Shown: positions 5,791-33,063, counted from the stretch's first letter. The stretch is DNA of 64,000 nt from IMGVR_UViG_3300046808_001241:1-64000, one strand, 5' to 3'. The notes: a model not told the origin generated them from the letters alone. Made by a program: numbers and translations.

Positions 5791-5825
5791 CCTGTCCAAG
5801 AAGAATATAGATTATAAAGACTGTT

Positions 5826-5993: not shown

Positions 5994-5994
5994 T

Positions 5995-6314: not shown

Positions 6315-6351
6315 GTTGACATGTCCAACAACATAGCTGACTCTATTAAAG

Positions 6352-7218: not shown

Positions 7219-7275
7219 TTTTTCATAACAGAGAAGAAGGGCCTTGGATTCGTTTCTGAGGCCCTTTTGCTTTTT
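7219..7275 (+). terminator. TTTTTCATAACAG followed by terminator hairpin
   Basis: AAGGGCCT/AGGCCCTT stem followed by T-rich sequence. Confidence 0.7.
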
Positions 7276-7280
7276 ATAGA

Positions 7281-7314
7281 CAAAACGATTTTAAACGCAT
7301 CCTAGTGCCAAGAA
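7281..7314 (+). repeat. 34-bp intergenic repeat, copy 2
   Basis: CAAAACGATTTTAAACGCATCCTAGTGCCAAGAA. Confidence 0.85.
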
Positions 7315-7512
7315 CAATGGGAATTACCCTGCAGAAGATTCTCGTTGAGGTCATCAAGGAAAGACTTGAATGTGTCTGCATGATATTTAGAGCACAACTA
7401 CACATCCTTTGCATGATCAAGAATCCTTCGAAGTGGAGATTCTATTTGAAGGGAATCTTGAGAGAGTTTGGGATTGACCTGTCCAAGAACTGACAGGACT
7501 ATAGAGACTGTT

Positions 7513-7761
7513 ATGAACGCTACATCTACTACACCACAACACAAATCATTCACACGAGTCGTCCCCCACAAGTACTTCATGGACCTTGTCAAGGAGGCTC
7601 GTAGGGTCAAGTACATCATCAAGCAAGAGGGTCAGCACCTGTACGATGTGCGGGACGACGAGACTGGGGAGAAGGTCTTCTTTGGCATGAAGCACTCTTC
7701 AGGCAAGTGGATTGCTTCCTTCTCTACAGCATATTGGCAAGAGCCTGCACTGCCAGCTTGA
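7513..7761 (+). CDS. early hypothetical protein
   Basis: after promoter 7474. Confidence 0.8.
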   Translation: MNATSTTPQHKSFTRVVPHKYFMDLVKEARRVKYIIKQEGQHLYDVRDDETGEKVFFGMKHSSGKWIASFSTAYWQEPALPA

Positions 7762-7763
7762 TC

Positions 7764-7937
7764 ATGAACACATTCAATCCCAAAGACTATATCGTGACGC
7801 TTGATGGCTTCCGAGGCTATGTCGTGAAGCGTCTGGACTATTGCCACAACATGTACGAGATCAGACTCGCATCGGGCTTGACAGTACGGGGCGGAGAAGA
7901 GCTGAAGCTGGATGAGCTGATGTATCAAGAAGCTTGA
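7764..7937 (+). CDS. early hypothetical protein
   Basis: stop in motif 7934. Confidence 0.7.
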   Translation: MNTFNPKDYIVTLDGFRGYVVKRLDYCHNMYEIRLASGLTVRGGEELKLDELMYQEA

Positions 7938-7972
7938 CCTGTCCTGAAGACTCCCTGACAATCTTTAATGTT

Positions 7973-8230
7973 ATGACGATCGATTCAAAAAACACTGCAA
8001 CCTTTATCGGCAATGAGATCTCAGTCCGTCACTCGGTACGGCCAGACGTCCGGAGGGAGTTCCTAGCCTTCTCTATCGACAACGGATGGGACGATGTGAA
8101 GAAGGTCCATAAGAAGGTCCTGAAGTTCCAAGACCGCAAGTTCGTCTTCAGTGGCTGGAACTCAGACACTAACGAGTGCTACTTCTTCCGTCCCTTGAAT
8201 CAAGACCCAGACACTGCTACGATCCTTTAA
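7973..8230 (+). CDS. early hypothetical protein
   Basis: after promoter 7934. Confidence 0.75.
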   Translation: MTIDSKNTATFIGNEISVRHSVRPDVRREFLAFSIDNGWDDVKKVHKKVLKFQDRKFVFSGWNSDTNECYFFRPLNQDPDTATIL

Positions 8231-8254
8231 GAGGGTTTGATTAAATAAAATAGT

Positions 8255-8620
8255 ATGAAGAATAAAGATACTCAATTACTAGAAGAAGCTTACGAGAAAG
8301 TCATGGAACAATCCTTTCCTGTTGGCATGAAAGAGAAGATCGAAAGGTATGCAGAGCTTTCAGACCCTGATGCCGAATTAGATACAGAGGAAGAAATGGA
8401 ATTGAGCGATCTACAAAAGTGGGCTGAACAACATGGAGTAATTGACCATTTCGAGAAGCATGCAGAGAGCGCTCATTTTGGAAGAGGTATGTCAGGACAA
8501 GCTTCTGATCCTCTAGCATTCAGACAAAAAATGATGAATCCTCTGAGAGTTACTAAAGCCGGCAAAGCTTATTCCCAAGACATTCAAGGCAGAAAGAATT
8601 TGATGCGAAACATCAAATAA
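8255..8620 (+). CDS. putative late internal head protein
   Basis: TAAATA at 8242; N-terminus MKNKDTQLLEEAY is shared with 14378. Confidence 0.7.
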   Translation: MKNKDTQLLEEAYEKVMEQSFPVGMKEKIERYAELSDPDAELDTEEEMELSDLQKWAEQHGVIDHFEKHAESAHFGRGMSGQASDPLAFRQKMMNPLRVTKAGKAYSQDIQGRKNLMRNIK

Positions 8621-8631
8621 CTTAAAGAAAA

Positions 8632-8678
8632 TTTCATAACAGTATAGAGAGAGGTCTTCGGGCCTCTCTTTCTTTTTG
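8632..8678 (+). terminator. TTTCATAACAGTAT followed by UUCG terminator hairpin
   Basis: GAGAGGTC-TTCG-GGCCTCTC then a T tract. Confidence 0.8.
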
Positions 8679-8713
8679 TTGACCTGTCTTGCAGACTCTC
8701 TGACTATAGACAT

Positions 8714-8941
8714 ATGAGCACACACAACTATAGGCAAGACATGGAGCGGATGGAAGCCAAGGAGAAGATCGAGCGGCTTGAATGGGAGCTAGCTTGTGAG
8801 AAGGAGTGGACTGAGAAGCTGCAGAAGATAGCACGGGAGCATTATAAAAGTGCAGAGACAGCTAGACAAGAGCGAGACGAGGCTCGCAAAGATGCAGAGT
8901 ACCACAAAGCCCGCTACGACGTACTGAGGGAGAGCTGGTAA
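8714..8941 (+). CDS. early coiled-coil hypothetical protein
   Basis: after promoter 8679. Confidence 0.75.
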   Translation: MSTHNYRQDMERMEAKEKIERLEWELACEKEWTEKLQKIAREHYKSAETARQERDEARKDAEYHKARYDVLRESW

Positions 8942-9202
8942 CATCTTATAACTAAACGACTTATCAATATTGTGGAATGTGTCTTCGCTGGGGGAGTGTT
9001 CGAGGGCCAGTGGGTGGGACTGGATGAAGTGGAAGTAGTGGAGAGCTTCCAGAAGCAATTGGTTCCCAATAATAGGTTTATAACTTCTCCCTTCTGTACG
9101 TTCTTTTATAGGGGCAACAAGTACACGTCTCAGGTGACAAAGAGGCCGACATGGGTCTTTGAATAGTTGACCTGTCCTATAGTCTCCCTGAAAGTCTTTC
9201 TC

Positions 9203-9430
9203 ATGCACACAACCCAAACTCTCATCAATCAACTGATCAAGACTCTCGCCGAACAACTCCGGGCAGTTGATAATGCTACTCTGGGACTGAAGAGTACCTA
9301 CAAGAAGATCGCTCAGTGTTCCAAGACAGTGGCACAGCTTGAGAAGCTCGGAGTGGATCACAACACAGCATACGACAGGGCTGACTTGATCAATGGAGTA
9401 GCGGATCGCGAGACTCTTGGAATGGCTTAA
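9203..9430 (+). CDS. early hypothetical protein
   Basis: after promoter 9167. Confidence 0.75.
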   Translation: MHTTQTLINQLIKTLAEQLRAVDNATLGLKSTYKKIAQCSKTVAQLEKLGVDHNTAYDRADLINGVADRETLGMA

Positions 9431-9434
9431 TACT

Positions 9435-9698
9435 ATGATACTCAATCTATTCCCTCACCTTAAAGGCTACAAAGTACTTCATGGATCTCCGGGGTGCGAG
9501 ACTCCAGAGACTATCAAATCGATTCGGACTGATAGGATTAAGAAGAGCTTCCTGACTCTAGAGTTCGACAGTGGAGTCTTCACCTACATTAACAAAGAAG
9601 ACTTTGATCGGTTCCTGGAAGAAGGAAAGGTATACTTCCAGCGAGCGGCAGGCAGGATGGGCTTCGAAGCTCCAGAGAGTTTGGTTGACCTGTCCTGA
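9435..9698 (+). CDS. hypothetical protein
   Basis: ends inside motif 9685; start uncertain. Confidence 0.65.
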   Translation: MILNLFPHLKGYKVLHGSPGCETPETIKSIRTDRIKKSFLTLEFDSGVFTYINKEDFDRFLEEGKVYFQRAAGRMGFEAPESLVDLS

Positions 9699-9723
9699 GA
9701 CTTTATAGAATATCAATATCGTT

Positions 9724-10062
9724 ATGAGAATAAATACTCCATTCACAATCACTAGCCGTATTGCAGAAGCTCTTGGACTTCCTGACAGCCATATGGCGGA
9801 TGCTCTTCTGATCACTCGGTACAAAGCTGTTGCAGAGATTGTCTCCAGCTTCCTGAACTATACAGATAACAAGATCGCTTCTCAGCAAGGGTTCTTTGCT
9901 TCTATGATCATTCGGATCCTTCTCCCTAATGACAAGGCCGTGCACTTCTCTGATATGCAGACGGTTATCAATATCATCATGAATGGGGAGAAGGCTATAC
10001 AGGAAGAGATGAAGCAGGAGAGGGAAGACTGGAGAGCGGCGCGGGAACTTGCTACTGCTTAA
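9724..10062 (+). CDS. early hypothetical protein
   Basis: after promoter 9685. Confidence 0.75.
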   Translation: MRINTPFTITSRIAEALGLPDSHMADALLITRYKAVAEIVSSFLNYTDNKIASQQGFFASMIIRILLPNDKAVHFSDMQTVINIIMNGEKAIQEEMKQEREDWRAARELATA

Positions 10063-10068
10063 GACTTT

Positions 10069-10239
10069 ATGGAAGACACTACTCCTTCTTATGAACAGCT
10101 TTACATGGAACACCAGAGAGTCCTGGCTGAGTACTATAGAGACTCTGTAGACTTCCATAAGCAGATCATACAGCTTAAGGACGAGCTAGCAGAAGCAAAG
10201 CTAGCCCTACAAAACCAATCCTCAAAAGAAAGAAAGTGA
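10069..10239 (+). CDS. small coiled-coil protein (56 aa, not in ORF track)
   Basis: open frame filling the gap before promoter 10249. Confidence 0.55.
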   Translation: MEDTTPSYEQLYMEHQRVLAEYYRDSVDFHKQIIQLKDELAEAKLALQNQSSKERK

Positions 10240-10283
10240 TCTTATCTATTGACTTGTCCAACGATTGGTCTTAATATTATCTC

Positions 10284-10856
10284 ATGATTAAAACAGCTAA
10301 GAAGAAAAAAGCAGCGAAGGGCAAAGGGTTCAAGATTAAACCAATCCCGTTGAGTGAAGAGCAGATCACAATGTTTGTTAGTCATTATAAACAGTTTAAG
10401 TCTTTTCCTGGCTCAAAGATCCCTTGCACTATTACTGGAAAGCTAACTACTTGTGTAGGGCCTTGGATGCAGAAGAAGATCAAGGAGTTCGGTTCAGCGG
10501 AGTCCTTGTTGCGCAACTACCAATGCAGGGGAGCTCTTAAAGACCAAAGGATTAAAGCAAAGCCTCAGAAGGTTAAACGGAAGAGTAAAGTAAAGGATCT
10601 TATTGAAAAGGAAGAGGGTAAGTATAACATTCCTTCCATGGATAGTTTTGTAAAGCCCACACCATATGATCCCGCAAAAGAATCTGAGTCCGTCTGCTTG
10701 CGGCCCGATATCTTTCTGTCGAACGATCGGCATTGTGATGGATGTCACCACTTTAAGATCTGCCGCAGCCGTCTCAAGAATCTTCCAAAGCATGTTTCAT
10801 TTGATGGAAACAGCTTTGTGTACGATGAAGGTTACAAGACAAAGAAAAAGAAATGA
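10284..10856 (+). CDS. Lys-rich early protein with Cys/His cluster, possible nucleic-acid binder
   Basis: very basic; C-x9-H-C-x2-C-HH-x3-C; promoter at 10249. Confidence 0.75.
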   Translation: MIKTAKKKKAAKGKGFKIKPIPLSEEQITMFVSHYKQFKSFPGSKIPCTITGKLTTCVGPWMQKKIKEFGSAESLLRNYQCRGALKDQRIKAKPQKVKRKSKVKDLIEKEEGKYNIPSMDSFVKPTPYDPAKESESVCLRPDIFLSNDRHCDGCHHFKICRSRLKNLPKHVSFDGNSFVYDEGYKTKKKK

Positions 10857-10969
10857 TCTGGTACATCTATATAGCCTTCATGTCAATACTGATTACTGTC
10901 AACCTCTATGAGTGGTACAAAAAGGTAAAGTAGTTGACGTGTCCGAAGCCTTTCCGGAATATAGACAAC

Positions 10970-11482
10970 ATGACACAGAAGAAGATCTCAATGAATAGGC
11001 GGAAGCTTTCTTCGCCGTACTTCTCAATAAGAAAGGAGAAGGTCAAGTGGCCAACTATCCGCGGAGCATATATGACGGATAGCAATGTGCCTGTACTCAA
11101 AGACTTTGTAACGAAGAAGGGTCGTTCGATTATCTTTCTGGATGGGAAGTATGATACTACTCTGAATCGTTATAAGAATCTTCCATCCGAAGAGCGAGCG
11201 ATCGCTTGGGAGTTCATGTGCAGAGAGAATGGAGTCAAAGGAGGGATCTTCATGCTGTGCTGGCTTGGGAACTTCCACAATGGGTGCATCTTCCATGCCT
11301 CTCCTCAGTTCCCACAGATTCAATGCTGGTATGAACAGATGGGAGTAGAGAGGGCTAATGCGTTCTTCGAGAGGCAAGCATTCAAGATCTATAACGAAGT
11401 GGTAAAGATTGTACACAATGGTGGTTCGATTGTGGATAAAGAAGTGCAAGAGTTTATAACTAATGGCACCAACAAAGTTTAA
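10970..11482 (+). CDS. early hypothetical protein
   Basis: after promoter 10934. Confidence 0.75.
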   Translation: MTQKKISMNRRKLSSPYFSIRKEKVKWPTIRGAYMTDSNVPVLKDFVTKKGRSIIFLDGKYDTTLNRYKNLPSEERAIAWEFMCRENGVKGGIFMLCWLGNFHNGCIFHASPQFPQIQCWYEQMGVERANAFFERQAFKIYNEVVKIVHNGGSIVDKEVQEFITNGTNKV

Positions 11483-11483
11483 T

Positions 11484-11681
11484 ATGACAAAAGAACGACA
11501 AAAACAATTAGAAGATTGCGAGCTTATGCTAGGAAGGATTGCCAACCTGGTGCAAGAGTTCTGTGAAGAGGATGAGACTACCTTGCAAGGAGTTGCAAAG
11601 CTTGTTGCAACCTATAGAGATTATCAAGCACAAGAAGCTTGGGACTTTGTATACTCCTTGCATCTGAAGAAGAAGATATGA
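11484..11681 (+). CDS. hypothetical protein
   Basis: tightly packed ORF. Confidence 0.6.
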   Translation: MTKERQKQLEDCELMLGRIANLVQEFCEEDETTLQGVAKLVATYRDYQAQEAWDFVYSLHLKKKI

Positions 11682-11875
11682 AGATCGTAAAAGTCCCTAT
11701 AGAACTATCCTTGATGAGCTACTTTGATGAAGCACACAGTTCTCTTGTAATGGCTGCTGAGGTTGCTCATTTCGAAAAGCATCCAGAAGCTCAGAACATT
11801 TCTGAACTAATCGATACATTGGAAGAAATTATTCTAAAGGTTTGTGACGAGACATCTTTAACACAAAAAACATGA
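11678..11875 (+). CDS. hypothetical protein
   Basis: ATGA overlap. Confidence 0.6.
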   Translation: MKIVKVPIELSLMSYFDEAHSSLVMAAEVAHFEKHPEAQNISELIDTLEEIILKVCDETSLTQKT

Positions 11876-12054
11876 CAATGCCACTACACATTCAAAGGTC
11901 CCTTGTGACAGCTCTCTATACTACTATAAGTGTTTATTATCCGTTGCGAAATAAGCAGCTTGCGGCGCGCGAGTACGTTAAGCAATCTATTGAGGCTCTG
12001 AGGTATATTCAAATGAATACTCCGGGCGAGGACTGGATAGCGGTAATGATGTAG
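11872..12054 (+). CDS. hypothetical protein
   Basis: ATGA overlap. Confidence 0.55.
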   Translation: MTMPLHIQRSLVTALYTTISVYYPLRNKQLAAREYVKQSIEALRYIQMNTPGEDWIAVMM

Positions 12055-19621: not shown

Positions 19622-19891
19622 ATGAATAAACCGAAGATTAGTTTAGGCGGAAAGAACAACCATGGACGCATGAGTGGCGCACGTTCGAGTCGTGCATCTT
19701 CGACCATTTTCAAAAAATTGCAAAAGTTGGATAGAGAAATTTCTTTTCTTAAAGCTCGTTGTAATTTGTCAAATTATTATATTTTAGGAAAAGCATTTAT
19801 AAAAAAGACAGAAGAAAGAATAGAAAAACTTGACTTGAAGAGAAAACAAGTTAGACTTGAAAGAAAGAAATATAAAAATGAAAACAAATAA
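19622..19891 (+). CDS. basic hypothetical protein
   Basis: packed ORF. Confidence 0.55.
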   Translation: MNKPKISLGGKNNHGRMSGARSSRASSTIFKKLQKLDREISFLKARCNLSNYYILGKAFIKKTEERIEKLDLKRKQVRLERKKYKNENK

Positions 19892-23724: not shown

Positions 23725-24336
23725 ATGAAAAAACCAATAACATTTAAACAAGCTGGTATGATCGTAATCGTTCTGCATGTAGCTGGATTTATTGGTTTTA
23801 CTCAATATGCAAGTTATAGAGCAGCCATAGCTAAACAATTGAGAGAGTCTAAAAAGACGGAACTGTTGTCAGAAATTCGTTCACAACAAGATTGGAATAA
23901 CGTCAACATAAAGCCTAGAATTGTTGCAGTAGCGACTCCCAAAAAACCCTCTTCTCCTAGTAATAAGGAAAACCAAAAAGGGGACATGCTACGAACCGTA
24001 CAAAATTTTGCAGTACAAACAACTGACAAAATCAAACAAGAGCTGAAGGAGGTTAACGTCTCTTCAACAAACCAGCAGCAACCAGCTAGAACAAAACCGG
24101 TCACCTCTACTGTTTGGAAGGTAGAAGTAAAACAACCGTCTCCGACACCATCAATAGTTGCTTCGAAGCAACAAGCCCAAAAAAGAAAAATAGATATAGC
24201 CTCGATTAAACAAAATGTAAATAAACTTAAATCTGAAATACAAACCATCAAAACGGTCAGTTTCAGCAACGGACTTGTTACGCAAACTACGGAAGAAATT
24301 CAACAAAGGATGTCTTCTCACATAGTGCTGAGATAA
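23725..24336 (+). CDS. membrane-anchored low-complexity protein
   Basis: N-terminal TM; K/Q/P/S/T-rich. Confidence 0.7.
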   Translation: MKKPITFKQAGMIVIVLHVAGFIGFTQYASYRAAIAKQLRESKKTELLSEIRSQQDWNNVNIKPRIVAVATPKKPSSPSNKENQKGDMLRTVQNFAVQTTDKIKQELKEVNVSSTNQQQPARTKPVTSTVWKVEVKQPSPTPSIVASKQQAQKRKIDIASIKQNVNKLKSEIQTIKTVSFSNGLVTQTTEEIQQRMSSHIVLR

Positions 24337-24344
24337 TTATACTT

Positions 24345-24590
24345 GGGCTAAGCATGAAAACGAGCCGCGACCCGCTGATAAAGGGTGCTTAGTCCTAAGA
24401 CGTCGCGGGTAAACGTCTCATTTGCCAGACCCGATTAGGCAGGGAGTGATAAGTAACCTTCGTCCAGCGTGTTAAAAACACGGTAGCCAATGAAGAGCTT
24501 TCTGGTATAATTACATTTGATCTCTGCCAAAGGCAGGAATCCTACAGAGGCTTGACCGCTGAGCCAGCAATGCGAATTAGCGGTAACGAT
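24345..24590 (+). ncRNA. candidate structured RNA with 5' nested pseudoknot, unassigned
   Basis: GGCTAAGCA/TGCTTAGTC, CCGCGA/TCGCGG and CCC/GGG pairings plus downstream helices; no credible ORF. Confidence 0.5.
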
Positions 24591-24602
24591 CTTTGAAATT
24601 TT

Positions 24603-25036
24603 GGGGGTGTACTGGTTTCGACACATAGTTGAACCTAAGAGTGCATGCAGAGGTTAATCGATGGCCTCTTTAAAAATCGATTAAAAACCTAAACGCAGAA
24701 GACAACACTTCTGACCTCTTAGCTGAGGCCGAATACATCTTCAACAATGCTGACGAGTTCCTCGCCGGCGTTGAAGAGTACGAACTCGCAGCCTAAGAGC
24801 CTAATAGAGGATCCTCTAAATCTATTTTGAAACGTAGAGGAAAAGATAACAGTGTAAGCTTGTAAAAAATTACCACTGAGAAATATATGATCTTCGCATA
24901 TATAGGCAGACACAAAAAGTTAGGCCGATGAGCCACGACAGCCTTTTGTCAATCAAATGTCAAATCCATCCAAGCATGTGAAGAGCTTTTAGCATAAATT
25001 ATTTGGACAGGGGTTCGAATCCCCTCACCTCCACCA
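24603..25036 (+). ncRNA. ssrA: tmRNA
   Basis: 5' GGGGGTGTACTGGTTTCGAC, 3' GGGGTTCGAATCCCCTCACCTCCACCA with G3:U; tag ORF 24695-24796 ending YELAA*. Confidence 0.95.
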
Positions 25037-25053
25037 TAAATATATTAACTAAC

Positions 25054-25141
25054 GGACAGGTGGCAGAGTGGTCGATTGCGCTGGTCTTGAAAACCAGAGG
25101 ACCGAAAGGTTCCGTGGGTTCGAATCCTACCCTGTCCGCCA
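25054..25141 (+). tRNA. tRNA-Ser(TGA)
   Basis: GGACAGG/CCTGTCC, CTTGAAA loop, long variable arm, CCA. Confidence 0.95.
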
Positions 25142-25161
25142 CTTTCTCATTGCGAACGAAA

Positions 25162-25233
25162 GGGGGTGTGGTGCTAATGGTAACACATGGCCTTTGCAAG
25201 GCTGGGTTAAGAGTTCGATTCTCTTCACCTCCA
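25162..25233 (+). tRNA. tRNA-Ala(TGC)
   Basis: GGGGGTG/CACCTCC with G3:U70 (same stem as the tmRNA), TTTGCAA loop. Confidence 0.85.
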
Positions 25234-25405
25234 CGTTCTTACTTTTTCTTTTTATTAGCTCCTTTTTGAGATGATTTAGAACCAGCTTGCTTTGGTTTTT
25301 TCTTTTCTTTACGTTGGGAGTTGTTTCCTTTTGCCATAGTAAAATTACTTATTATTTTTTGTTAATTTTCTTGAATGTCCAAACATTTCGTGTATTATAT
25401 AAAGC

Positions 25406-25672
25406 ATGCAACCGACTATTAAAGATCTACGACGGCAAGGGTACAAGGTACGAGTAATGCACACTCGGGAATATTGGATTAAAGCTAGGGTAACCGGGCA
25501 CTCAAAAGAACTGCATGCAAGAGGAGGTTCTACTAAAATTGAACTAACCACACCCGATAAACAACACACAGTTGCAGGAGAAGCAGTTTGTTCGCTTGAA
25601 GATAACTTTAATAGGAAATTAGGCAATTCAATTGCTCTTGGACGAGCTCTTACAGCGTTAGAACACAAATAA
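25406..25672 (+). CDS. phage hypothetical protein
   Basis: ARGGST...AVCSLEDNFNRKLGNSIALGRA pattern. Confidence 0.75.
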   Translation: MQPTIKDLRRQGYKVRVMHTREYWIKARVTGHSKELHARGGSTKIELTTPDKQHTVAGEAVCSLEDNFNRKLGNSIALGRALTALEHK

Positions 25673-25680
25673 TTTAAAAA

Positions 25681-25767
25681 GCTCGAGTGGCGAAATGGCG
25701 AAACGCAAAGGACTTAAAATCCTTTACATTAGAAACACTGTGGGTTCGAGTCCCACCTCGAGTACCA
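25681..25767 (+). tRNA. tRNA-Leu(TAA)
   Basis: GCTCGAG/CTCGAGT, CTTAAAA loop, variable arm, CCA. Confidence 0.95.
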
Positions 25768-25778
25768 AATTTTAAAAT

Positions 25779-25863
25779 GGGTAGTTCGTATAGCGGCAAT
25801 TACTGAAGACTGTAAATCTTCTGCCTTCGGGCTTCGCAGGTTCGAGTCCTGCACTACCCACCA
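25779..25863 (+). tRNA. tRNA-Tyr(GTA)
   Basis: GGGTAGT/ACTACCC, CTGTAAA loop, CCA. Confidence 0.95.
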
Positions 25864-25873
25864 CTTTCAAAAT

Positions 25874-26041
25874 ATGACACAAAACACAACACAAGAAAAA
25901 GTATTCCAACTCTGTCAGGAATTGGAAGAGATGAAGCAACGCAAAAAGTCGTTCGTTAGGGCTTATAACGAAGAAATCAAGCGTTTGCAAGCAGAGATTA
26001 AAGACCTTATCAATCCCGAAGAAGCAGTTGAACTTCCTTAA
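25874..26041 (+). CDS. small coiled-coil protein (55 aa, not in ORF track)
   Basis: MTQNTTQEKVFQLCQELEEMKQRKK... Confidence 0.6.
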   Translation: MTQNTTQEKVFQLCQELEEMKQRKKSFVRAYNEEIKRLQAEIKDLINPEEAVELP

Positions 26042-26093
26042 TATTCAAAAGAACCGGCTTAGTTAGTTCGATCCCAATTAAGCATATTATTAC

Positions 26094-26360
26094 ATGAAGG
26101 ATCTCATAAGAGAGTCAGCAGGAATATTAATGGCTTTGTGCTTTATGTTCTGTTATGTACCTCAAATAGTCAAAATAGCAAAAACAAAATCTTCAAAAGA
26201 CGTTTCTCTGTCTTTAATCTTTATGTGCATGGGAGGATACACATTTGGTTTGCTTTATATGTTTTTGACGAATTTTGCTTTGTGGATATTTTTAAACTAC
26301 ACTTTTGGGCTTGTCATGTCATCGGTTCTGATATATACTTGCTTTAAATATAAAAAATAG
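26094..26360 (+). CDS. PQ-loop / SemiSWEET-family transporter
   Basis: 88 aa, three TM segments, YVPQIVKIAKTKSSKDVSL signature. Confidence 0.85.
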   Translation: MKDLIRESAGILMALCFMFCYVPQIVKIAKTKSSKDVSLSLIFMCMGGYTFGLLYMFLTNFALWIFLNYTFGLVMSSVLIYTCFKYKK

Positions 26361-26435
26361 ACTTGTAGCTCAGCTAGTCAGAGCACATCATTGATAATGA
26401 TGGGGTCGTTGGTGCAAATCCAACCAGGTCTACCA
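26359..26435 (+). tRNA. tRNA-Ile(GAT)
   Basis: AGACTTG/CAGGTCT, CATCA-TTGATAA-TGATG; atypical T-loop TGCAAAT; CCA. Confidence 0.85.
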
Positions 26436-26438
26436 AAC

Positions 26439-26516
26439 GCTCCTATGGTGTAATTGGTTAACACATCTCCCTTTCACGGAGAAGACTTGCGGGTTCGAGC
26501 CCCGCTGGGAGTGCCA
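26439..26516 (+). tRNA. tRNA-Glu(TTC)
   Basis: TCTCC-CTTTCAC-GGAGA, CCA. Confidence 0.9.
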
Positions 26517-26687
26517 TAAATACTACAAATGAAGGTAGAAAAAATAACACGAATTTACTTGCCTTTCAAAGACCATTTCAAAAAACAAAAAGACGATAAA
26601 AAACAACAACGGAAGAAAAAAACCGTTGAGCAGTCCAAAGAGAAAAAAGATAGTCATTTTATTGGATGGGCATAATTAATTTTATAA

Positions 26688-26759
26688 TGCGGGTTACAAT
26701 TCTGGGAATTGGGATGTCTCATAAGCATCTTCAGGAGGGTTCGATTCCCTCACCCGCTA
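26688..26759 (+). tRNA. tRNA with CAT anticodon (Met or Ile2)
   Basis: GATGT-CTCATAA-GCATC, GAGGG-TTCGATT-CCCTC; mismatched first acceptor pair, short D arm. Confidence 0.75.
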
Positions 26760-26762
26760 TTA

Positions 26763-26837
26763 GCCGGCATAGCTCAGTGGTAGAGCAACGGTTTTGTAAA
26801 CCGTCGGTCCTCGGTTCGAATCCGAGTGTCGGCTCCA
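26763..26837 (+). tRNA. tRNA-Thr(TGT)
   Basis: canonical cloverleaf, TTTGTAA loop, CCA. Confidence 0.95.
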
Positions 26838-26843
26838 TTTTTT

Positions 26844-26918
26844 TGGCGAGTAGCTCAGTGGTAGAGCGGTCGGCTGTTAACCGATTGGTCGTAGGTTCGA
26901 ATCCTACCTCGCCAGCCA
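26844..26918 (+). tRNA. tRNA-Asn(GTT)
   Basis: TGGCGAG/CTCGCCA, CTGTTAA loop, CCA. Confidence 0.95.
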
Positions 26919-26970
26919 TTTTAAGTGGACTTGTCCACTATTTGATAGTATCTTTATTTCACAATAAAAC

Positions 26971-27047
26971 GTACCTGTAGCTCAGTTGGATAGAGCAATA
27001 GCCTTCTAAGCTATTGGTCGCTGGTTCGAGCCCAGCCAGGTACGCCA
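26971..27047 (+). tRNA. tRNA-Arg(TCT)
   Basis: GTACCTG/CAGGTAC, CTTCTAA loop, CCA. Confidence 0.95.
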
Positions 27048-27058
27048 CTTTTACACAC

Positions 27059-28578: not shown

Positions 28579-28968
28579 TTAAATGTAACCTAAGTGGTGC
28601 ATTCTGCGATGGCGTTCACGTCCAGACTCTGTGCCACGATCATACACATCAAACGGTTTAACTGTATCTTCTGCGACGCTTGAGAGCTCAATGTTTCCTG
28701 AGGACACAACTGCTTGAGAAACTCCTGCTGATAAAGCAGAAACCGAAACAGAATATGCTCCCAACGTTGTTGATAAAGCATCGAACGTATAAACGGAATT
28801 AGTAGCATCTGAAATAGCAATGCTGTCTTTTTTCCATTGATACTCATATGTCGCAGTAGAAAAATCAGCAGAAGCTACTACCGAAAATGTTGTATCTTGT
28901 CCAAAAGGAACATTAGAGAGAATAGTACCAGCGTTTGGAGTTAAAGATGTGATGATAATGGATGCCAT
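28579..28968 (-). CDS. Ig-like domain virion protein
   Basis: FSVVA...YQWKKD..AISDAT.S.YT...GAYSVSV; TAAATA upstream on the minus strand (28975-28980). Confidence 0.8.
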   Translation of the reverse strand: MASIIITSLTPNAGTILSNVPFGQDTTFSVVASADFSTATYEYQWKKDSIAISDATNSVYTFDALSTTLGAYSVSVSALSAGVSQAVVSSGNIELSSVAEDTVKPFDVYDRGTESGRERHRRMHHLGYI

Positions 28969-29149
28969 ATCTTTTATTTATCTATTTTGGAAGAAAAATT
29001 TGTCGTTCTTCGTTCAAACAAATTAAAAACAAATTGTTTTCAGGTTCAAAAATTCTTTGCGCTGTACTCTAGAAGCTGACTATTCAATCGTTCTTGTTAG
29101 TCTTCTTTGCGTTTAGAATATTTTTAAGCGTTTGTCCTTAAATATTATT

Positions 29150-29758
29150 ATGAACCGAACAATATTAATTGCGTGCATTGCAATATTGTTGCTTCCGTCC
29201 TGCACTGTATATACAGAGAAGCAATCAGAAGTTTTGTCACAATCAGCCTATTTAGCAGATGATTCGTTTGAGGCCGGTCGTTTTGATGTAACCGACTCTG
29301 CCTTAGATAATGTAATCCGGATCGTCAAACCTCCAAAACAAAGACTGCAAATTAAAGCAATCGAAACACCAACCTCTTTAACTTCTTCTTCTGAAGGTTC
29401 AACGCAAAAAAATACAAACACTGCTGCTAATCAAAAAATTGTAATAGTTCCTGAAAAATTCAAAAACCAACAAATAGTGGTCGTGAATTCTGAAGAGTTT
29501 CAACAGTTAATAAAAGACAAAAAAATACTCGAGCAATTACAGGGTGATCATAAAATTCTTAATAAATTAAAAGTAGATATTGAACAGGAGCTTGCAAAGC
29601 AAATAGCTTACAACAATAAAATGGTCGAGGACTTAAACAAACTACAAAAAGAATTGTTATCAAAAAAACTTCTTATCTTAAAATTGTACATAATTATAGC
29701 AATAATGGTATTGGTAATGGGGGGAGGAGTCTATCTTAGATTGAAAGGAATTTTATGA
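29150..29758 (+). CDS. lipoprotein with coiled coil and C-terminal TM, putative unimolecular spanin
   Basis: lipobox LLLPSC; C-terminal IIIAIMVLVMGGGVYL; TAAATA at 29139. Confidence 0.65.
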   Translation: MNRTILIACIAILLLPSCTVYTEKQSEVLSQSAYLADDSFEAGRFDVTDSALDNVIRIVKPPKQRLQIKAIETPTSLTSSSEGSTQKNTNTAANQKIVIVPEKFKNQQIVVVNSEEFQQLIKDKKILEQLQGDHKILNKLKVDIEQELAKQIAYNNKMVEDLNKLQKELLSKKLLILKLYIIIAIMVLVMGGGVYLRLKGIL

Positions 29759-29874
29759 AAAACATATTGCAACTTGTCTTAGAAAATATTAAAATGTTTT
29801 ATAAAAAACATCCTATCTTGGCTGTTTTTATATCCGGAATATTATTTGGTTTGTTTTTATCGTTTATTTTTTAG
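29755..29874 (+). CDS. 39-aa TM peptide (not in ORF track)
   Basis: ATGA overlap; ILAVFISGILFGLFLSFIF. Confidence 0.55.
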   Translation: MKNILQLVLENIKMFYKKHPILAVFISGILFGLFLSFIF

Positions 29875-29875
29875 T

Positions 29876-30349
29876 ATGTGGAGAGGAATAACAGATTTAA
29901 TAAAAGCTGCAGCATCAATGTTGCATAGCGGATCTGTGCCTCCAAACACCCCTGTAAGATATAAAGAAGATTTAAGTAAAGTAAATTTTTTAGCTTCTAA
30001 AAAATTTTATGTAGTATTCTGGTCGGTTGTCATACTAGCAATATTTTATGTTGCTAGTATTGTGGTATTGTTTTTAACAGCAAATGCTCCTTCCTTAACA
30101 GTTCCGTTTGTTTCAATTTTTACAGAAACTATTAAAATACTAGCTATTATAATTGCTAGTTATCTTGGTGTACAAACAGTATTGGATTACAAAATGCAGT
30201 CTAACACAAATATTGATTTGCAAGGTTCAAATTCTTTTACTAGTGAAGTTGTTGATGAAAACGTAGTTCAAAAATTTGCAGAGAAACATAAAACAGATCT
30301 TTCATACGCACCTTTAGAGTGGATTCAAGAAAGGAGCTTTGAAGTATGA
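29876..30349 (+). CDS. two-TM holin-like protein
   Basis: two long hydrophobic segments, directly before the endolysin. Confidence 0.6.
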   Translation: MWRGITDLIKAAASMLHSGSVPPNTPVRYKEDLSKVNFLASKKFYVVFWSVVILAIFYVASIVVLFLTANAPSLTVPFVSIFTETIKILAIIIASYLGVQTVLDYKMQSNTNIDLQGSNSFTSEVVDENVVQKFAEKHKTDLSYAPLEWIQERSFEV

Positions 30350-30822
30350 ATCTTTGGCCAAAGCAAAATTATTCATCCATGGTAGAATACTACGGTCTAG
30401 TAGGAGAGAATCAAACAACTCTCATTCTTCCATATACTTTAAAGTTGGCTTGGGATTCGTCCTCCGTAGTTAAAAGAATGACATGTCATTTAAAAGTTGC
30501 TGAATCGTTACACAGCATATTTGAAAATGTTTTAAAAACTTACGGTGAAAAAGAATTGCGAAAACTGAACTTAGATGTGTTTGGAGGCTGTTTAAACGTA
30601 AGAAAAATGAGAGGGAGTAAAAATACGTGGTCTATACATTCTTGGGGAGCGGCTGTAGATTTGGATCCGAATAACAATCAGCTAAAATGGAATAATAACA
30701 AAGCAACGTTTGCAAAAAGGGAATACGAACCTTTTTGGAAAATAATCGAATCAGAGGGCTGGGTTAGTTTAGGAAAACAAAGAAATTATGACTGGATGCA
30801 CTTTCAAGCAGCAACACTCTAA
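30346..30822 (+). CDS. endolysin, M15-family Zn peptidase
   Basis: RKMRG, SIHSWGAAVD, DWMHFQ. Confidence 0.9.
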   Translation: MNLWPKQNYSSMVEYYGLVGENQTTLILPYTLKLAWDSSSVVKRMTCHLKVAESLHSIFENVLKTYGEKELRKLNLDVFGGCLNVRKMRGSKNTWSIHSWGAAVDLDPNNNQLKWNNNKATFAKREYEPFWKIIESEGWVSLGKQRNYDWMHFQAATL

Positions 30823-31729
30823 TCTTAAAAGTAAAAGACGGACAGAAGTTGGAGAAACGGAACGTCTTTTATTAAACATTACAAACAGACAAGCAAACTT
30901 AAAAGAACTGTCGTCGTATTTATCAGAATTAGAGAGCCAACTGGCTTTAATTTTTGCAGCATCTCCTGATATTATTGTGTTGTTGGACAAAACAGCCAAA
31001 ATTTTGAAAATCAGCGAGGCTGCTTATTCTGCTTTAGAATATAGAAAAGAAGAATTGGTAGGTAAGTGTCTTTGGGATTTTATTTCTTTGGACGATTTAG
31101 ATAAGACAAAAGAAACGTTTTTAAGTTTGCAACAAGGAACAGAAACGATTGAGACAAAAGCTTTGATAAATCGTTGGATTTCAAAAAGTGGCAAATTAGT
31201 AAAATTAGTTTGGAGATTTTCTTTGTTCAATTCAGAAAAAAACTATACTGTCGGAATTGCTTCTGATGTGTCTGTTTTTGGAGAAAACGAAAAGTACGAT
31301 CTCAAAACGCTTCAAAAAGCAGTAGACTTATCTGCAGATGGAGTAATTGTAACAGACTCTTTTAGTAAACACAATACAATAGTGTATGTGAACGAAGCGT
31401 TTTGCAATATGACTGGTTATACACAAGCGGAACTTGTTGGAAAAAATGCAAAATTTTTGCAAAGCGAAGAATGCAAGCATTCTAGAGCAATTAATACATT
31501 AAGAGAATGCATAAAAACAGGAAAAGGGTGCGACATACTTTTACAAAACATCAAAAAAAACGGAGAGATATTTTATAATAAATTGATGGTGTCTGCTGTT
31601 AAAGAAGGAGATGAGGTAATAAATCATATCTGGATATCTAAAGACGTGACAGATGAGATTGGGATCAAATATGAATGGTCTCCAAATACAGAAAGGGGGT
31701 TTTGGATTTTAAATGAGCAGAAACTCTGA
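30788..31729 (+). CDS. tandem PAS-domain protein, second domain LOV-like, no output domain
   Basis: PDIIVLLD...EELVGK; DGVIVTD...IVYVNEAFCNMTGY..AELVGKNAKFLQ...NIKKNG..FYN. Confidence 0.9.
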   Translation: MTGCTFKQQHSNLKSKRRTEVGETERLLLNITNRQANLKELSSYLSELESQLALIFAASPDIIVLLDKTAKILKISEAAYSALEYRKEELVGKCLWDFISLDDLDKTKETFLSLQQGTETIETKALINRWISKSGKLVKLVWRFSLFNSEKNYTVGIASDVSVFGENEKYDLKTLQKAVDLSADGVIVTDSFSKHNTIVYVNEAFCNMTGYTQAELVGKNAKFLQSEECKHSRAINTLRECIKTGKGCDILLQNIKKNGEIFYNKLMVSAVKEGDEVINHIWISKDVTDEIGIKYEWSPNTERGFWILNEQKL

Positions 31730-32114
31730 TGCCCTACAAAAAAACAATTACGAAGGAAATGGTTGGTCAAAATACCAAATCATGGTATTGCAGCAACTTG
31801 AGGATCATAATGCTGTTTTACAAAATTTAAATAAAGAACTAATCGAACTTAAGCAAAACATGGCTGTGTCTGAAACCGAGTTAAAAATGTGGAGAGCTCA
31901 GACCATGTTGTCCATTGAAAAGCTTACTGAAGAAGTTGACGAAATACTTTATGACGAAAGCGGACTAAGCTACAAAATTAGAGCTCTTGAGAGGAATAAC
32001 GAAGTCGACGAAAAAGTTAGTTTAAAAACAAAAGCCATTTGGGCTATGTTGGGAGCTATATTGACTTTTTTAGCAAGTTTTGGAGCTAAGGTAGTAGAAA
32101 TTTTTTTAAAATAG
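31713..32114 (+). CDS. coiled-coil protein with C-terminal TM
   Basis: heptad pattern; AIWAMLGAILTFLASFGA. Confidence 0.75.
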   Translation: MSRNSDALQKNNYEGNGWSKYQIMVLQQLEDHNAVLQNLNKELIELKQNMAVSETELKMWRAQTMLSIEKLTEEVDEILYDESGLSYKIRALERNNEVDEKVSLKTKAIWAMLGAILTFLASFGAKVVEIFLK

Positions 32115-32181: not shown

Positions 32182-33063
32182 ATGACTGACACACTACAAG
32201 TACTAACCTTAGACGAAGCAATCAGCCGAGTTCCTGCTATTGGAGCTACAGGCCCATCGGAGCGCGTTTCTGACAGCTATCAATTCGTTTCCACTCGCGA
32301 CATTCTTGAGCGCGTTCAACAAGACGGCTGGCTTATTACAGGCGTAAATGCTCAAAGCCGAATGCCTTATGCTCAGCATCGTGTAACTCTTGTTCATGAA
32401 AATAGCCTCGAGAAGGCACGCCAAGCTGTCGGAAATTTGACAAATCAACCAGATGAAGGAATTCCTCGAATTGAGATGTTCAATTCACATAATTTGACCA
32501 AACGTCTTATGTTTGCAATTGGATATTTTAAATTTGTTTGCTCTAACGGACTTATTGTGGCTAGCGGTCCTGCTGAGACCATTCGTACTAAACATCGCTT
32601 TTCAGGAGATCGCCTCAACGAAATCATGGAACAAGTCTCCTCAATTTCAGAACGCTTTCCGGTTATCAATCAAACCATCAACGACTTCCGTTCTCGTCAA
32701 ATGACAGAAGAGGAACAAGTTGCTTATGCACAGTTTGCAATTAAAGGTCGCTTTAACTATCGTCCTGAAATGCCGAAGCGTTTCCGTGATATGGGTCGCA
32801 CCGTAGAAAAGCTTCTTGCTCATCGCCGAGAAGAGGACAACGGCAACACGACATGGCAAGTATTTAATCGAGTACAAGAAAATCTTATGATGGGCATGGA
32901 AGGGTTTTCCCGGCCAATTCGTGGATACTCTGATTCTGTTCGTGTTAACCAGCTTCTTTGGAAAGGCGCTGAGACAACCTTGAAATTTGATTCACAAGCA
33001 CTGAATACAGCTCTGATGAATTTGATTGTCAAGGATGGCAAAAAAGGCAAAGTCTCTGTCTAA
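32182..33063 (+). CDS. DUF932-family protein
   Basis: EMFNSHN, FVCSNGL, WQVFNRVQEN. Confidence 0.85.
   Translation: MTDTLQVLTLDEAISRVPAIGATGPSERVSDSYQFVSTRDILERVQQDGWLITGVNAQSRMPYAQHRVTLVHENSLEKARQAVGNLTNQPDEGIPRIEMFNSHNLTKRLMFAIGYFKFVCSNGLIVASGPAETIRTKHRFSGDRLNEIMEQVSSISERFPVINQTINDFRSRQMTEEEQVAYAQFAIKGRFNYRPEMPKRFRDMGRTVEKLLAHRREEDNGNTTWQVFNRVQENLMMGMEGFSRPIRGYSDSVRVNQLLWKGAETTLKFDSQALNTALMNLIVKDGKKGKVSV

What the first reader, a model, noticed from the sequence alone, without database searches (positions are those of the whole stretch)
29139..32114. A stand-alone PAS/LOV-like sensor gene sits inside the lysis cassette
Seen: after a late TAAATA promoter come a lipoprotein with C-terminal TM, a 39-aa TM peptide, a two-TM holin-like gene, an M15 endolysin, a 313-aa protein of coiled coil plus two PAS domains with no kinase, GGDEF or HTH output, and a coiled coil with C-terminal TM. 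All overlap or abut. The second PAS follows the LOV pattern (GKNAKFLQ for GxNCRFLQ, with the downstream Asn residues kept) but lacks the photoadduct Cys and the signalling Gln. Established: PAS/LOV domains sense flavin redox, light, oxygen or small ligands, and T4 lysis inhibition acts through holin regulators. Inference: a sensor that links light, redox or metabolic state to lysis timing through coiled-coil contact with the holin or the adjacent membrane protein.
Basis: partly seen in the sequence, partly recalled or inferred. Interest (0 to 1): 0.82.

Follow-up and report, generated by a model that had tools for sequence, protein, structure and literature searches.

The report
Phage lysis cassette with LOV-derived sensor
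A 217-kb freshwater T4-like phage carries, right after its cell-bursting genes, a sensor protein descended from blue-light (LOV) receptors and always paired with a small membrane protein, which suggests, without proving, that some phages time host lysis by light or flavin redox state.

Summary
Window 29150-32114 (+) encodes six overlapping or abutting genes. They are a lipoprotein with a C-terminal TM (u-spanin-like), a 39-aa TM peptide, a 2-TM holin-like protein, an M15 endolysin, a 313-aa helix-PAS-PAS protein and a tail-anchored helical protein.

PAS2 is a LOV domain by sequence: all best PDB matches are LOV domains. It has Ala for the adduct Cys and Ser for the active-site Gln.

New findings:
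- The sensor belongs to a virus-specific family of at least 120 clusters. Of 114 full-length members, 48 keep a canonical GxNCRFLQ pocket, on both sides of the deepest split in a midpoint-rooted tree.
- The window's Cys-less state is therefore most simply derived (codons TGT, GGA, GCA).
- 44 members have a degenerate pocket, and three loci have lost the LOV domain entirely.
- The tail-anchored, weakly XhlA-like gene follows the sensor in 34 of 34 informative loci.
- An endolysin lies directly upstream in 28 of 38 loci and switches between M15 and GH24. One distant locus has a convergent holin-GH108 pair.
- Related phages carry the same spanin-holin-endolysin set without this pair, so the pair is an optional add-on.

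Best reading: an accessory, flavin-sensing regulator of lysis timing. This is inferred, not shown. The window's copy cannot form the classical photoadduct.

The parts
29139..29144 (+). TAAATA, a promoter-like motif 5 nt before ATG 29150, within cTTAAATAtt
   Evidence: TAARTA lies within 30 nt upstream of the ATG of 74/299 crude genes of the 217-kb genome, against about 5 expected, mostly 5-9 nt from the ATG. CTAAATA, CTAAGTA or ATAAGTA sits at the same position upstream of the orthologous gene in 8/8 relatives. The exact T4 TATAAATA is not here.
29150..29758 (+). u-spanin-like protein (202 aa): lipoprotein signal with Cys18, helical middle, C-terminal TM
   Evidence: Hydropathy spans at residues 1-23 and 168-202. 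The Cys and the C-terminal ...GGGVYLRIKGIL end are kept in homologues (38-74% identity) at the head of the cassette in relatives. No Pfam or PHROG hit.
29755..29874 (+). 39-aa single-TM peptide
   Evidence: TM at residues 18-39. Homologous small ORF (41-54% identity) in the same slot in L021, L023, L027, L030 and L044, and a look-alike in L005. Absent in several other relatives.
29876..30349 (+). 2-TM holin-like protein (157 aa)
   Evidence: Two hydrophobic spans. Homologues lie immediately upstream of M15, GH24 and GH108 endolysins. 256 homologues, none with a Pfam family. Atlas look-alikes are viral hypothetical proteins.
30346..30822 (+). M15 peptidase endolysin (158 aa), no TM or signal
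   Evidence: Pfam Peptidase_M15_4 3.1e-8, above cut-off. phrog_17001 endolysin 1.4e-69. No hydrophobic span.
30788..31729 (+). 313-aa cytoplasmic helix-PAS1-LOV-type PAS2 protein with a conserved C-terminal tail
   Evidence: Pfam PAS_9 4.6e-26 in two stretches, no output domain. AlphaFold model pLDDT 76. At least 120 homologue clusters.
30836..30961 (+). N-terminal long helix (residues 17-58), the most conserved part of the family together with the start of PAS1
   Evidence: Helix 17-58 in the model. Invariant R34, Y44, L45, E49, S50, Q51. Lowest column entropy of all regions.
30962..31267 (+). PAS1 (residues 59-160), not LOV-like
   Evidence: Pfam PAS_11 and PAS stretches; model. This part, with the N-helix, is what remains in the LOV-deleted variants L017, L039 and L047.
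31340..31657 (+). PAS2, a LOV-type domain (residues 185-290)
   Evidence: phmmer against PDB: residues 171-291 match LOV domains as all 60 listed hits. The best is the short-LOV 7a6p at 1.4e-18, followed by YtvA, aureochrome and phototropin.
31439..31462 (+). GKNAKFLQ, the LOV GxNCRFLQ motif with Cys to Ala (codon GCA, 31448-31450) and Arg to Lys
   Evidence: Relatives have TGT/TGC (Cys) or GGA (Gly) at this codon.
31637..31639 (+). Ser284 at the position of the LOV active-site Gln
   Evidence: Alignment to PDB LOV domains. No family member has Gln here; they have S, V, I, C, L or A.
31658..31726 (+). Conserved C-terminal tail (KYEWSPNxExGF; W297, G304, F305 invariant), in place of a J-alpha helix
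   Evidence: Conserved also in members with a degenerate pocket. Predicted as short strands.
31713..32114 (+). 133-aa tail-anchored helical membrane protein, the obligate neighbour of the sensor; weakly XhlA-like
   Evidence: Follows the PAS gene in 34/34 informative loci. Invariant Y13, G15-N-G-W-S19, Y21, Q22, H32. Two helices, 17-80 and 86-132. phrog_1193/937 'hemolysin' (XhlA) at 8.6e-5 and 2.8e-4, and 14/40 members hit. Pfam XhlA only 4/40 at E about 0.08. Atlas look-alikes include XhlA and DUF2951 clusters.

Best explanation
**What it is.** The region is the lysis cassette of a freshwater T4-like jumbo phage. It encodes a u-spanin-like protein, a small TM peptide, a 2-TM holin, an M15 endolysin and a two-gene accessory module.

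**The module.** It consists of a cytoplasmic helix-PAS-LOV protein and a tail-anchored, XhlA-like membrane protein.

**Proposed mechanism.**
- The soluble protein docks on the cytoplasmic helical part of the membrane protein. It would do so through its invariant N-terminal helix/PAS1 and its C-terminal tail.
- This docking tunes when the holin opens the membrane. The pair would thus act as a cytoplasm-facing lysis-timing regulator, working like an antiholin or holin cofactor.
- In the ancestral and many present forms, the LOV domain binds a flavin and makes the interaction depend on blue light.
- In the window's phage the adduct Cys has been replaced (Cys to Gly to Ala) while the other flavin contacts are kept. 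This copy probably still binds flavin. It can respond at most to flavin reduction (redox state or photoreduction), or it is fixed in one state.

**Shown:**
- gene order and overlaps;
- LOV-type sequence and which residues are kept or lost;
- the family-wide distribution of Cys;
- the strict gene pairing;
- adjacency to three endolysin families;
- optional presence of the module.

**Inferred:**
- flavin binding;
- the protein-protein contact;
- any effect on lysis;
- the light response.
For: **LOV identity**
- All 60 listed PDB matches of PAS2 are LOV domains.
- A canonical relative matches short-LOV proteins at 6e-29.
- N220, F223, L224, Q225, R239, N254 and N264 are kept.

**Family pattern**
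- Of 114 full-length members, 48 have an intact pocket with Cys, 22 are intact without Cys and 44 are degenerate.
- Cys-bearing forms lie on both sides of the midpoint root.
- The codon path is TGT, GGA, GCA.

**Pairing**
- The 133-aa gene follows in 34/34 informative loci. It usually overlaps or lies within a few nt.
- Two loci fetched through the 133-aa protein both have a PAS gene upstream.

**Link to lysis**
- An endolysin is directly upstream in 28/38 loci. M15 and GH24 swap even between loci whose sensors are 80% identical.
- L037, in the distant clade, has an independent convergent arrangement with a homologous 2-TM protein plus a GH108 endolysin.
- The partner has XhlA-like architecture and weak XhlA hits.
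- In SPP1 and PBSX, a C-terminal-TM protein and a 2-TM holin cooperate and flank the endolysin (PMC6316719).

**Accessory nature**
- L048-L050 have the same spanin, holin (67-76% identical) and endolysin but no PAS or partner within 3.5 kb.

**Signalling without Cys or without Gln is established**
- PMC4682037 and PMC9098866.

**Expression**
- Perfect-match fragments of every cassette gene occur in a freshwater metatranscriptome. This is weak evidence.
Against: - No experiment or complex prediction links the two proteins or links either to lysis.
- In 10/38 loci the pair stands alone among opposite-strand genes with no endolysin directly upstream. One of these, L037, has a convergent holin-endolysin pair downstream.
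- Adjacency within the main clade may be largely inherited rather than selected.
- 39% of members have a degenerate pocket and three loci lack the LOV domain, so sensing is dispensable for the core role.
- The window's copy lacks both Cys and Gln. The cited papers each address the loss of only one of these, and I found no test of the double loss.
- The XhlA similarity is below Pfam's threshold and could reflect coiled-coil composition.
- Transcript boundaries are unknown. No further TAARTA-ATG pair occurs before 35154, so non-lysis genes (DUF932, exonuclease) may share the transcript.
- The RNA library may contain DNA.
Confidence: 0.5

Rival explanations
1. The PAS protein and its membrane partner form a self-contained membrane-associated module with a role other than lysis timing. 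Candidates are superinfection exclusion, control of another late process, or anchoring some activity at the membrane. Under this reading, its position after the endolysin in one clade is inherited gene order.
For: - The pair is a stand-alone two-gene island in 10/38 loci.
- The same lysis cassette exists without it, and in other genome neighbourhoods, in related phages.
- In the window the cassette lies among replication genes: ligase, DUF932, exonuclease, primase.
Against: - Overlapping reading frames join it to the endolysin in most loci.
- The link is kept through M15/GH24 exchanges.
- There is an independent convergent juxtaposition with a holin-GH108 pair in L037.
- The partner resembles the lysis-cassette protein XhlA.
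Confidence: 0.25
2. The 133-aa protein is a second holin component of the XhlA/gp24.1 type, and the PAS protein is merely its structural partner or chaperone. In this phage the LOV domain would be an evolutionary relic that binds nothing and senses nothing.
For: - The SPP1/PBSX precedent of a C-terminal-TM protein cooperating with a 2-TM holin.
- Loss of Cys and Gln in the window.
- 44/114 degenerate pockets and LOV-deleted variants, which still keep the N-helix, PAS1 and the partner.
Against: - In the window's 23-member clade the non-Cys flavin contacts (N, F, L, Q, R/K, N, N) stay conserved at 60-99% overall identity, whereas degenerate lineages scramble them.
- The holin functions without this partner in relatives, judging by its absence in L048-L050, so it is not an obligate co-holin.
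Confidence: 0.15
3. The gene is a host-derived 'moron'. It would be a copy of a proteobacterial short-LOV protein used to interfere with the host's own light or stress signalling, and unrelated to the neighbouring membrane protein.
For: - The closest solved relatives are stand-alone short-LOV proteins labelled 'sensory box protein' in the PDB. From my own knowledge these are Pseudomonas short-LOV proteins; the tool output gives no organism.
- One source labels a relative as RsbU-like.
Against: - The family is virus-specific. Only 1 hit was found in 185,579 species genomes, on a 5-kb MAG contig.
- It has its own architecture (N-helix, extra PAS1, conserved tail) and an invariant partner gene.
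- Similarity to cellular LOV domains is limited to PAS2, at 36.8% tblastn identity to the nearest cellular-type sequences, or about 45% counted by eye in the alignment of a canonical relative.
Confidence: 0.07

Closest known systems
Bacterial short-LOV proteins (PDB 7a6p, 7yx0, 7r5n, 3sw1; PpSB1-LOV type by my own knowledge) and YtvA
   Same: - Stand-alone LOV domain without an enzymatic or DNA-binding output.
- Best sequence matches: 1.4e-18 for the window, 6e-29 for a Cys-bearing relative.
- Same flavin-contact pattern GxN(C)RFLQ...R...N...N.
   Different: - The window has Ala for Cys and Lys for Arg in the motif.
- The whole phage family lacks the active-site Gln.
- There is an extra N-terminal helix and a first PAS domain.
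- A conserved beta-type C-terminal tail replaces the J-alpha helix.
- The gene is encoded by phages next to lysis genes.
Natural Cys-less LOV-like proteins (PMC4682037) and Gln-less LOV receptors (PMC9098866)
   Same: Both papers show that LOV domains lacking the adduct Cys, or the active-site Gln, can still signal. Natural examples have Ala at the Cys site or Ser/Ile/Leu at the Gln site. 24/114 family members pass the 8-of-9 residue filter used for Gln-less LOVs.
   Different: The window's protein lacks both residues at once and scores 7 of 9. None of the described examples, as far as these papers and my searches show, is phage-encoded or tied to lysis.
XhlA/XhlB/XlyA of PBSX and gp24.1/gp25/gp26 of phage SPP1
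   Same: A protein with a single C-terminal TM and a 2-TM holin flank an endolysin. The 133-aa protein has that topology and weak XhlA-family hits.
   Different: - The hosts there are Gram-positive.
- There is no sensor gene in those cassettes.
- Here the C-terminal-TM protein is optional for the cassette.
- Homology is below Pfam's threshold.
T4 antiholins RI and RIII (lysis inhibition)
   Same: Accessory proteins that set holin timing in a T4-type phage. RIII acts from the cytoplasm. This is established knowledge, not tested here.
   Different: - No sequence similarity turned up in PHROG or Pfam scans.
- The T4 signal is superinfection, not a cofactor state.
- T4's holin and spanins differ in type from those here.
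Unimolecular spanin gp11 of phage T1
   Same: N-terminal lipoprotein signal plus a C-terminal TM in one chain, encoded in the lysis cassette.
   Different: - No detectable sequence similarity.
- It is longer (202 aa) with a helical middle part.
- Pro at position -2 of the lipobox is unusual.

Membership tests
LOV domain (flavin-binding PAS subfamily) | PAS fold, with LOV domains as the closest relatives by sequence | tested here: met
   Pfam PAS_9 4.6e-26. The model shows the PAS fold at residues 185-286. All 60 listed PDB hits are LOV domains.
LOV domain (flavin-binding PAS subfamily) | Adduct-forming Cys in GxNCRFLQ | tested here: not met
   The window has Ala221, codon GCA. 48/114 relatives have Cys with an intact pocket.
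LOV domain (flavin-binding PAS subfamily) | Other conserved flavin contacts (YtvA N61, R63, F64, L65, Q66, N94, N104, and the second Arg) | tested here: met
   N220, F223, L224, Q225, R239, N254 and N264 are kept. R63 is replaced by Lys222.
LOV domain (flavin-binding PAS subfamily) | Active-site Gln on strand I-beta | tested here: not met
   Ser284. No family member has Gln.
LOV domain (flavin-binding PAS subfamily) | At least 8 of 9 conserved residues (the filter of PMC9098866) | tested here: not met
   Window 7/9. 24/114 relatives reach 8 or more.
LOV domain (flavin-binding PAS subfamily) | Binds FMN/FAD and shows a blue-light photocycle | not testable with these tools
   Needs purified protein and absorbance spectroscopy.
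Class II-type holin | Small membrane protein with two TM segments | tested here: met
   157 aa with two hydrophobic spans. This is hydropathy only.
Class II-type holin | Encoded next to the endolysin | tested here: met
   Immediately upstream of M15, GH24 or GH108 endolysins in all cassettes seen.
Class II-type holin | Forms lethal membrane lesions that release endolysin | not testable with these tools
   No holin HMM matched. Needs expression tests.
XhlA / SPP1 gp24.1 holin-like proteins | Membership by profile (Pfam PF10779; PHROG 937/1193) | tested here: inconclusive
   phrog_1193 8.6e-5, and 14/40 members hit with a best value of 1.2e-5. Pfam XhlA hits only 4/40 at E about 0.08, below cut-off. 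Atlas feature score 0.93.
XhlA / SPP1 gp24.1 holin-like proteins | Helical cytoplasmic part plus a single C-terminal TM, in a lysis cassette with a 2-TM holin | tested here: met
   The description of the family comes from PMC6316719.
XhlA / SPP1 gp24.1 holin-like proteins | Needed together with the 2-TM holin for lysis | tested here: not met
   By co-occurrence only: L048-L050 have the holin and endolysin without it. Function itself was not tested.
Unimolecular spanin (T1 gp11 type) | Lipoprotein signal with lipobox Cys, and a C-terminal TM, in one protein of the lysis cassette | tested here: met
   The Cys is invariant and the C-terminal TM conserved in all homologues. The lipobox is atypical (Pro at -2). 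Outer-membrane fusion activity is not testable here.
Peptidase M15 endolysin | Profile match above the curated cut-off | tested here: met
   PF13539 34.5 bits against 25. phrog_17001 1.4e-69.
T4 RI/RIII antiholins | Sequence homology | tested here: not met
   No such PHROG or Pfam family appears among the hits of any cassette protein. The resemblance is functional analogy only.

The most novel reading that the evidence does not exclude
A whole family of phage-encoded blue-light photoreceptors exists in freshwater T4-like jumbo phages. The Cys-bearing members would gate host lysis by light through their tail-anchored partner, for example by releasing progeny at a favourable time of day. The window's Cys-less form would be a derived variant that reads flavin redox state instead of light. 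If so, this would be the first natural light switch for phage lysis.
Probability: 0.3. Interest if true: 0.92.

Novelty: new variant of a known kind. Interest (0 to 1): 0.78.

Why it matters
Lysis timing sets burst size and phage fitness. The known regulators (antiholins, T4 lysis inhibition) respond to phage-internal or superinfection cues.

A flavin/LOV sensor wired into a lysis cassette would let a virus read light or host redox state directly. That would give a molecular handle on day-night patterns of viral lysis in lakes.

It would also supply a natural, compact light-dependent protein pair for use as a tool. It would extend LOV biology in two ways: a new output, a tail-anchored membrane partner, and a large natural series of Gln-less, Cys-less and pocket-degenerate variants.

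The claim is directly testable with standard expression, spectroscopy and lysis assays in E. coli.

Tried and rejected
- **DNA similarity to deposited phages:** blastn of the cassette against 50,697 phage records found nothing.
- **Protein search in those records:** tblastn of the sensor found only four unannotated Listeria 'phage' fragments, matching PAS2 alone at 36-37% identity. These are likely the host's own LOV gene and were not followed.
- **First locus search:** the single-protein search of viral contigs found none. The alignment-based searches worked.
- **Exact T4 late promoter:** TATAAATA occurs at chance frequency in the window and not at the cassette.
- **Generic scans:** sigma-70 and terminator scans were at shuffle level.
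- **Foldseek on the whole model:** it returned generic tandem-PAS proteins (DosP, PpsR, HIF/ARNT) with TM-scores of 0.3-0.4. This confirms the PAS folds but says nothing specific about LOV.
- **Cyanophage idea:** prompted by a relative that carries heme oxygenase and bilin reductase. The complete 217-kb genome has no psbA, hli or bilin reductase and only PhoH. The host remains unknown.
- **Obligate XhlA-type co-holin:** weakened, because the holin occurs without the partner.
- **Pfam on the 133-aa family:** mostly coiled-coil noise.
- **Metatranscriptome evidence:** too thin to define a transcript.
- **Not attempted:** no complex prediction of sensor plus partner was possible with the tools, and no fold search was run on the two-helix partner model, which would be uninformative.


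Full report
**Context.** The window is the first 64 kb of a 217,182-bp virus record with direct terminal repeats, rated complete. It encodes T4-type replication and recombination proteins: family B DNA polymerase, UvsX, a gp41-like helicase, gp46/47-like nuclease and primase. It also carries a cluster of tRNA genes and a tmRNA. It is found in freshwater metagenomes. No deposited phage resembles the region at the DNA level.

**Observation check.**
- The first protein is best read from ATG 29150. It has a signal peptide ending in a Cys and a C-terminal transmembrane span. Both are conserved in all homologues. This is the architecture of a unimolecular spanin.
- A 39-aa single-TM peptide follows. 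It recurs in at least six relatives.
- Next comes a 157-aa protein with two hydrophobic spans.
- Then an M15 peptidase endolysin (Pfam above cut-off; phrog_17001 1.4e-69).
- Then a 313-aa protein with two PAS domains and no output domain.
- Last is a 133-aa helical protein with a hydrophobic C-terminus.
- The genes overlap by 4, 4, 35 and 17 nt or abut.

**The promoter claim.** The 'late TAAATA promoter' is not the exact T4 octamer.
- TAARTA lies within 30 nt upstream of the ATG of 74 of 299 crudely called genes of this genome, against about 5 expected. It mostly ends 5-9 nt before the ATG and precedes many large genes.
- The same motif sits at the same place in front of the orthologous gene in eight relatives.
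- So the motif is real. It implies very short or absent leaders.

**The second PAS domain is a LOV domain by descent.**
- A phmmer search of the PDB gives LOV domains as all 60 listed hits over residues 171-291. These include short-LOV 'sensory box' proteins, YtvA, aureochromes and phototropins, with a best E-value of 1.4e-18.
- The motif is GKNAKFLQ, with Ala (GCA) for the adduct Cys and Lys for the following Arg.
- The second Arg and both Asn residues are kept. Ser stands where LOV domains have the active-site Gln.
- By the nine-residue filter used in PMC9098866, the window scores 7 of 9.

**The family changes the picture.**
- A protein search returned at least 120 clusters of about 300-aa homologues (39-99% identity). 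Many lie on contigs of 70-230 kb.
- Only one hit exists in one genome each of 185,579 prokaryote species, on a 5-kb MAG contig. The family is therefore essentially viral.
- The 114 near-full-length members split as follows:

| Pocket state | Members |
|---|---|
| Intact pocket with Cys (GxNC[RK]xxQ...[RK]...N) | 48 |
| Intact pocket, Cys replaced by Ala, Gly or Thr | 22 |
| Degenerate pocket | 44 |

- None has the Gln.
- On a maximum-likelihood tree, Cys-bearing forms lie on both sides of the midpoint root and in several subclades. A canonical Cys-bearing LOV is therefore the most economical ancestral state. The tree has no outgroup, so this rests on the midpoint root.
- Loss of Cys needs at least 3-4 events and pocket decay 4-5 events.
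- The window sits in a 23-member clade where Cys is mostly lost but three members keep it. The codons read TGT, then GGA, then GCA.
- A canonical relative matches short-LOV structures at 6e-29.
- Conservation is highest in the N-terminal helix, the start of PAS1 and a C-terminal tail (KYEWSPNxExGF). This holds in all three pocket classes. Only the pocket region relaxes in the degenerate class.
- Three loci (L017, L039, L047) have cleanly lost the LOV domain. They keep helix+PAS1 followed by the partner gene.

**Gene neighbourhood.** I collected 50 related loci. The counts below come from the 43 loci fetched through the sensor protein, several of which are near-duplicates.
- The 133-aa gene follows the sensor gene in all 34 loci with enough downstream DNA.
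- Two further loci fetched through the 133-aa protein both have a PAS gene upstream.
- An endolysin lies directly upstream of the sensor in 28 of 38 informative loci. It is an M15 peptidase in 9 and a GH24 lysozyme in 19. The type differs even between loci whose sensors are 80% identical (L021/L023 against L026/L035).
- In the deepest clade (38-43% identity) the pair is a two-gene island among opposite-strand genes.
- One such locus, L037, has a homologue of the 2-TM protein (E = 5e-9) followed by a GH108 endolysin. This pair converges on the end of the partner gene.
- Conversely, three related phages carry the same spanin-like gene, a 2-TM protein 67-76% identical to the window's, and an M15 or GH24 endolysin. 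They have no sensor or partner within 3.5 kb.
- The 2-TM protein is thus tied to three endolysin families, which supports calling it the holin. The sensor pair is an optional addition.

**The partner.**
- Its N-terminus carries an invariant Y-x-G-N-G-W-S-x-Y-Q motif, followed by two long helices. The second helix ends in the hydrophobic span.
- It gives weak but recurrent hits to the PHROG families annotated 'hemolysin' (XhlA): 14 of 40 members, best 1.2e-5.
- It gives sub-threshold hits to Pfam XhlA. Its Atlas look-alikes include XhlA and DUF2951 clusters.
- In SPP1 and PBSX, a protein with a C-terminal TM and a 2-TM holin cooperate and flank the endolysin (PMC6316719).
- The similarity may partly be coiled-coil composition, so I treat homology as inconclusive.

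**Mechanism.** The best-supported reading is an accessory regulator of lysis.
- A soluble, probably dimeric sensor binds the cytoplasmic part of a tail-anchored membrane protein and thereby adjusts holin triggering.
- In canonical family members the interaction would depend on blue light through a flavin.
- The literature shows that LOV domains can still signal without the Gln (PMC9098866) or without the Cys, through flavin reduction (PMC4682037).
- The window's copy lacks both. It cannot form the photoadduct. The otherwise conserved pocket argues that it still binds flavin and may read redox state, or that it is fixed in one state.
- Everything beyond sequence, conservation and gene order is inference.
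- Fragments of all cassette genes occur with perfect identity in one freshwater metatranscriptome, but depth is low and DNA carry-over cannot be excluded.

**Rivals.**
- A module with a non-lysis role whose position is inherited.
- A sensor-dead scaffold for an XhlA-type second holin.
- A host-derived short-LOV mimic.

The first rival is the most serious, because of the stand-alone loci and the sensor-free cassettes.

**Novelty.** Five full-text searches for natural phage LOV or PAS proteins linked to lysis found nothing relevant. LOV domains, holin regulators and XhlA-like proteins are each known. Their combination in a virus-specific family is not, as far as this library shows. I rate it a new variant of a known kind.

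**Limits.**
- The host is unknown. The complete genome has no psbA, hli or bilin reductase.
- Transcript boundaries are unknown.
- TM calls rest on hydropathy.
- Helices come from AlphaFold models with pLDDT 76 and 82.
- Several loci are near-duplicates, so locus counts overstate independence.

Noticed in passing
window 24603-25036 (+), with tRNA genes 25054-27047: The phage encodes a tmRNA (Rfam RF00023, 125.7 bits; ARAGORN tag peptide ending ...YELAA). It sits next to a cluster of at least 10 tRNA genes.
   Followed up: partly
whole genome G000; for example window 12079, 14378, 36588(-), 38007: A (G/A)ATAAATAA-like motif (TAARTA) ends 5-9 nt before the ATG of about a quarter of all genes (74/299, about 5 expected). 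This implies leaderless or near-leaderless mRNAs from a T4-late-type promoter. Internal cassette genes instead have AGGA/GGGGG Shine-Dalgarno-like sequences.
   Followed up: partly
window 19632-19706 (+): ARAGORN calls a tRNA with a four-base anticodon (gacg). Rfam's tRNA model did not reach its gathering score there, so it is unconfirmed.
   Followed up: partly
window 28579-28968 (-): A divergently oriented 129-aa ORF has weak Ig-like / Hoc-like head-decoration hits (phrog_4069 7e-5). It has its own ATAAATA motif 6 nt before the ATG. It is also conserved upstream of the cassette in L008.
   Followed up: no
window 1-12000 and 24000-26000: G+C is 41-46% in the first 12 kb and 42% in the tRNA region, against 32-36% elsewhere. 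GC skew changes sign near 22-24 kb.
   Followed up: no
window 27014-27058: The longest ORF of the ATP-dependent DNA ligase starts at TTG 27014, inside tRNA-Arg (26971-27047). The real start is probably the ATG at about 27059, since the profile match begins at residue 20.
   Followed up: no
L017:2836-3315, L039:1191-1700, L047:3438-3947: These are natural variants of the sensor that end cleanly after PAS1 (160-169 aa, no LOV domain). They are still followed by the 133-aa partner gene.
   Followed up: yes
L037:4769-5772 (-): In a distant relative, a homologous 2-TM protein and a GH108 + PG_binding_3 endolysin converge on the 3' end of the partner gene. This is a third endolysin family next to the module.
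   Followed up: yes
L049:4430-5640 (-): A related phage with the sensor-free cassette carries heme oxygenase and a ferredoxin-dependent bilin reductase directly after the endolysin.
   Followed up: partly
window 32188-33063 (+): The DUF932 protein (7e-22) follows the module in many relatives after a gap of 70-250 nt. The ORF listing start at TTG 32116 is probably too early.
   Followed up: no
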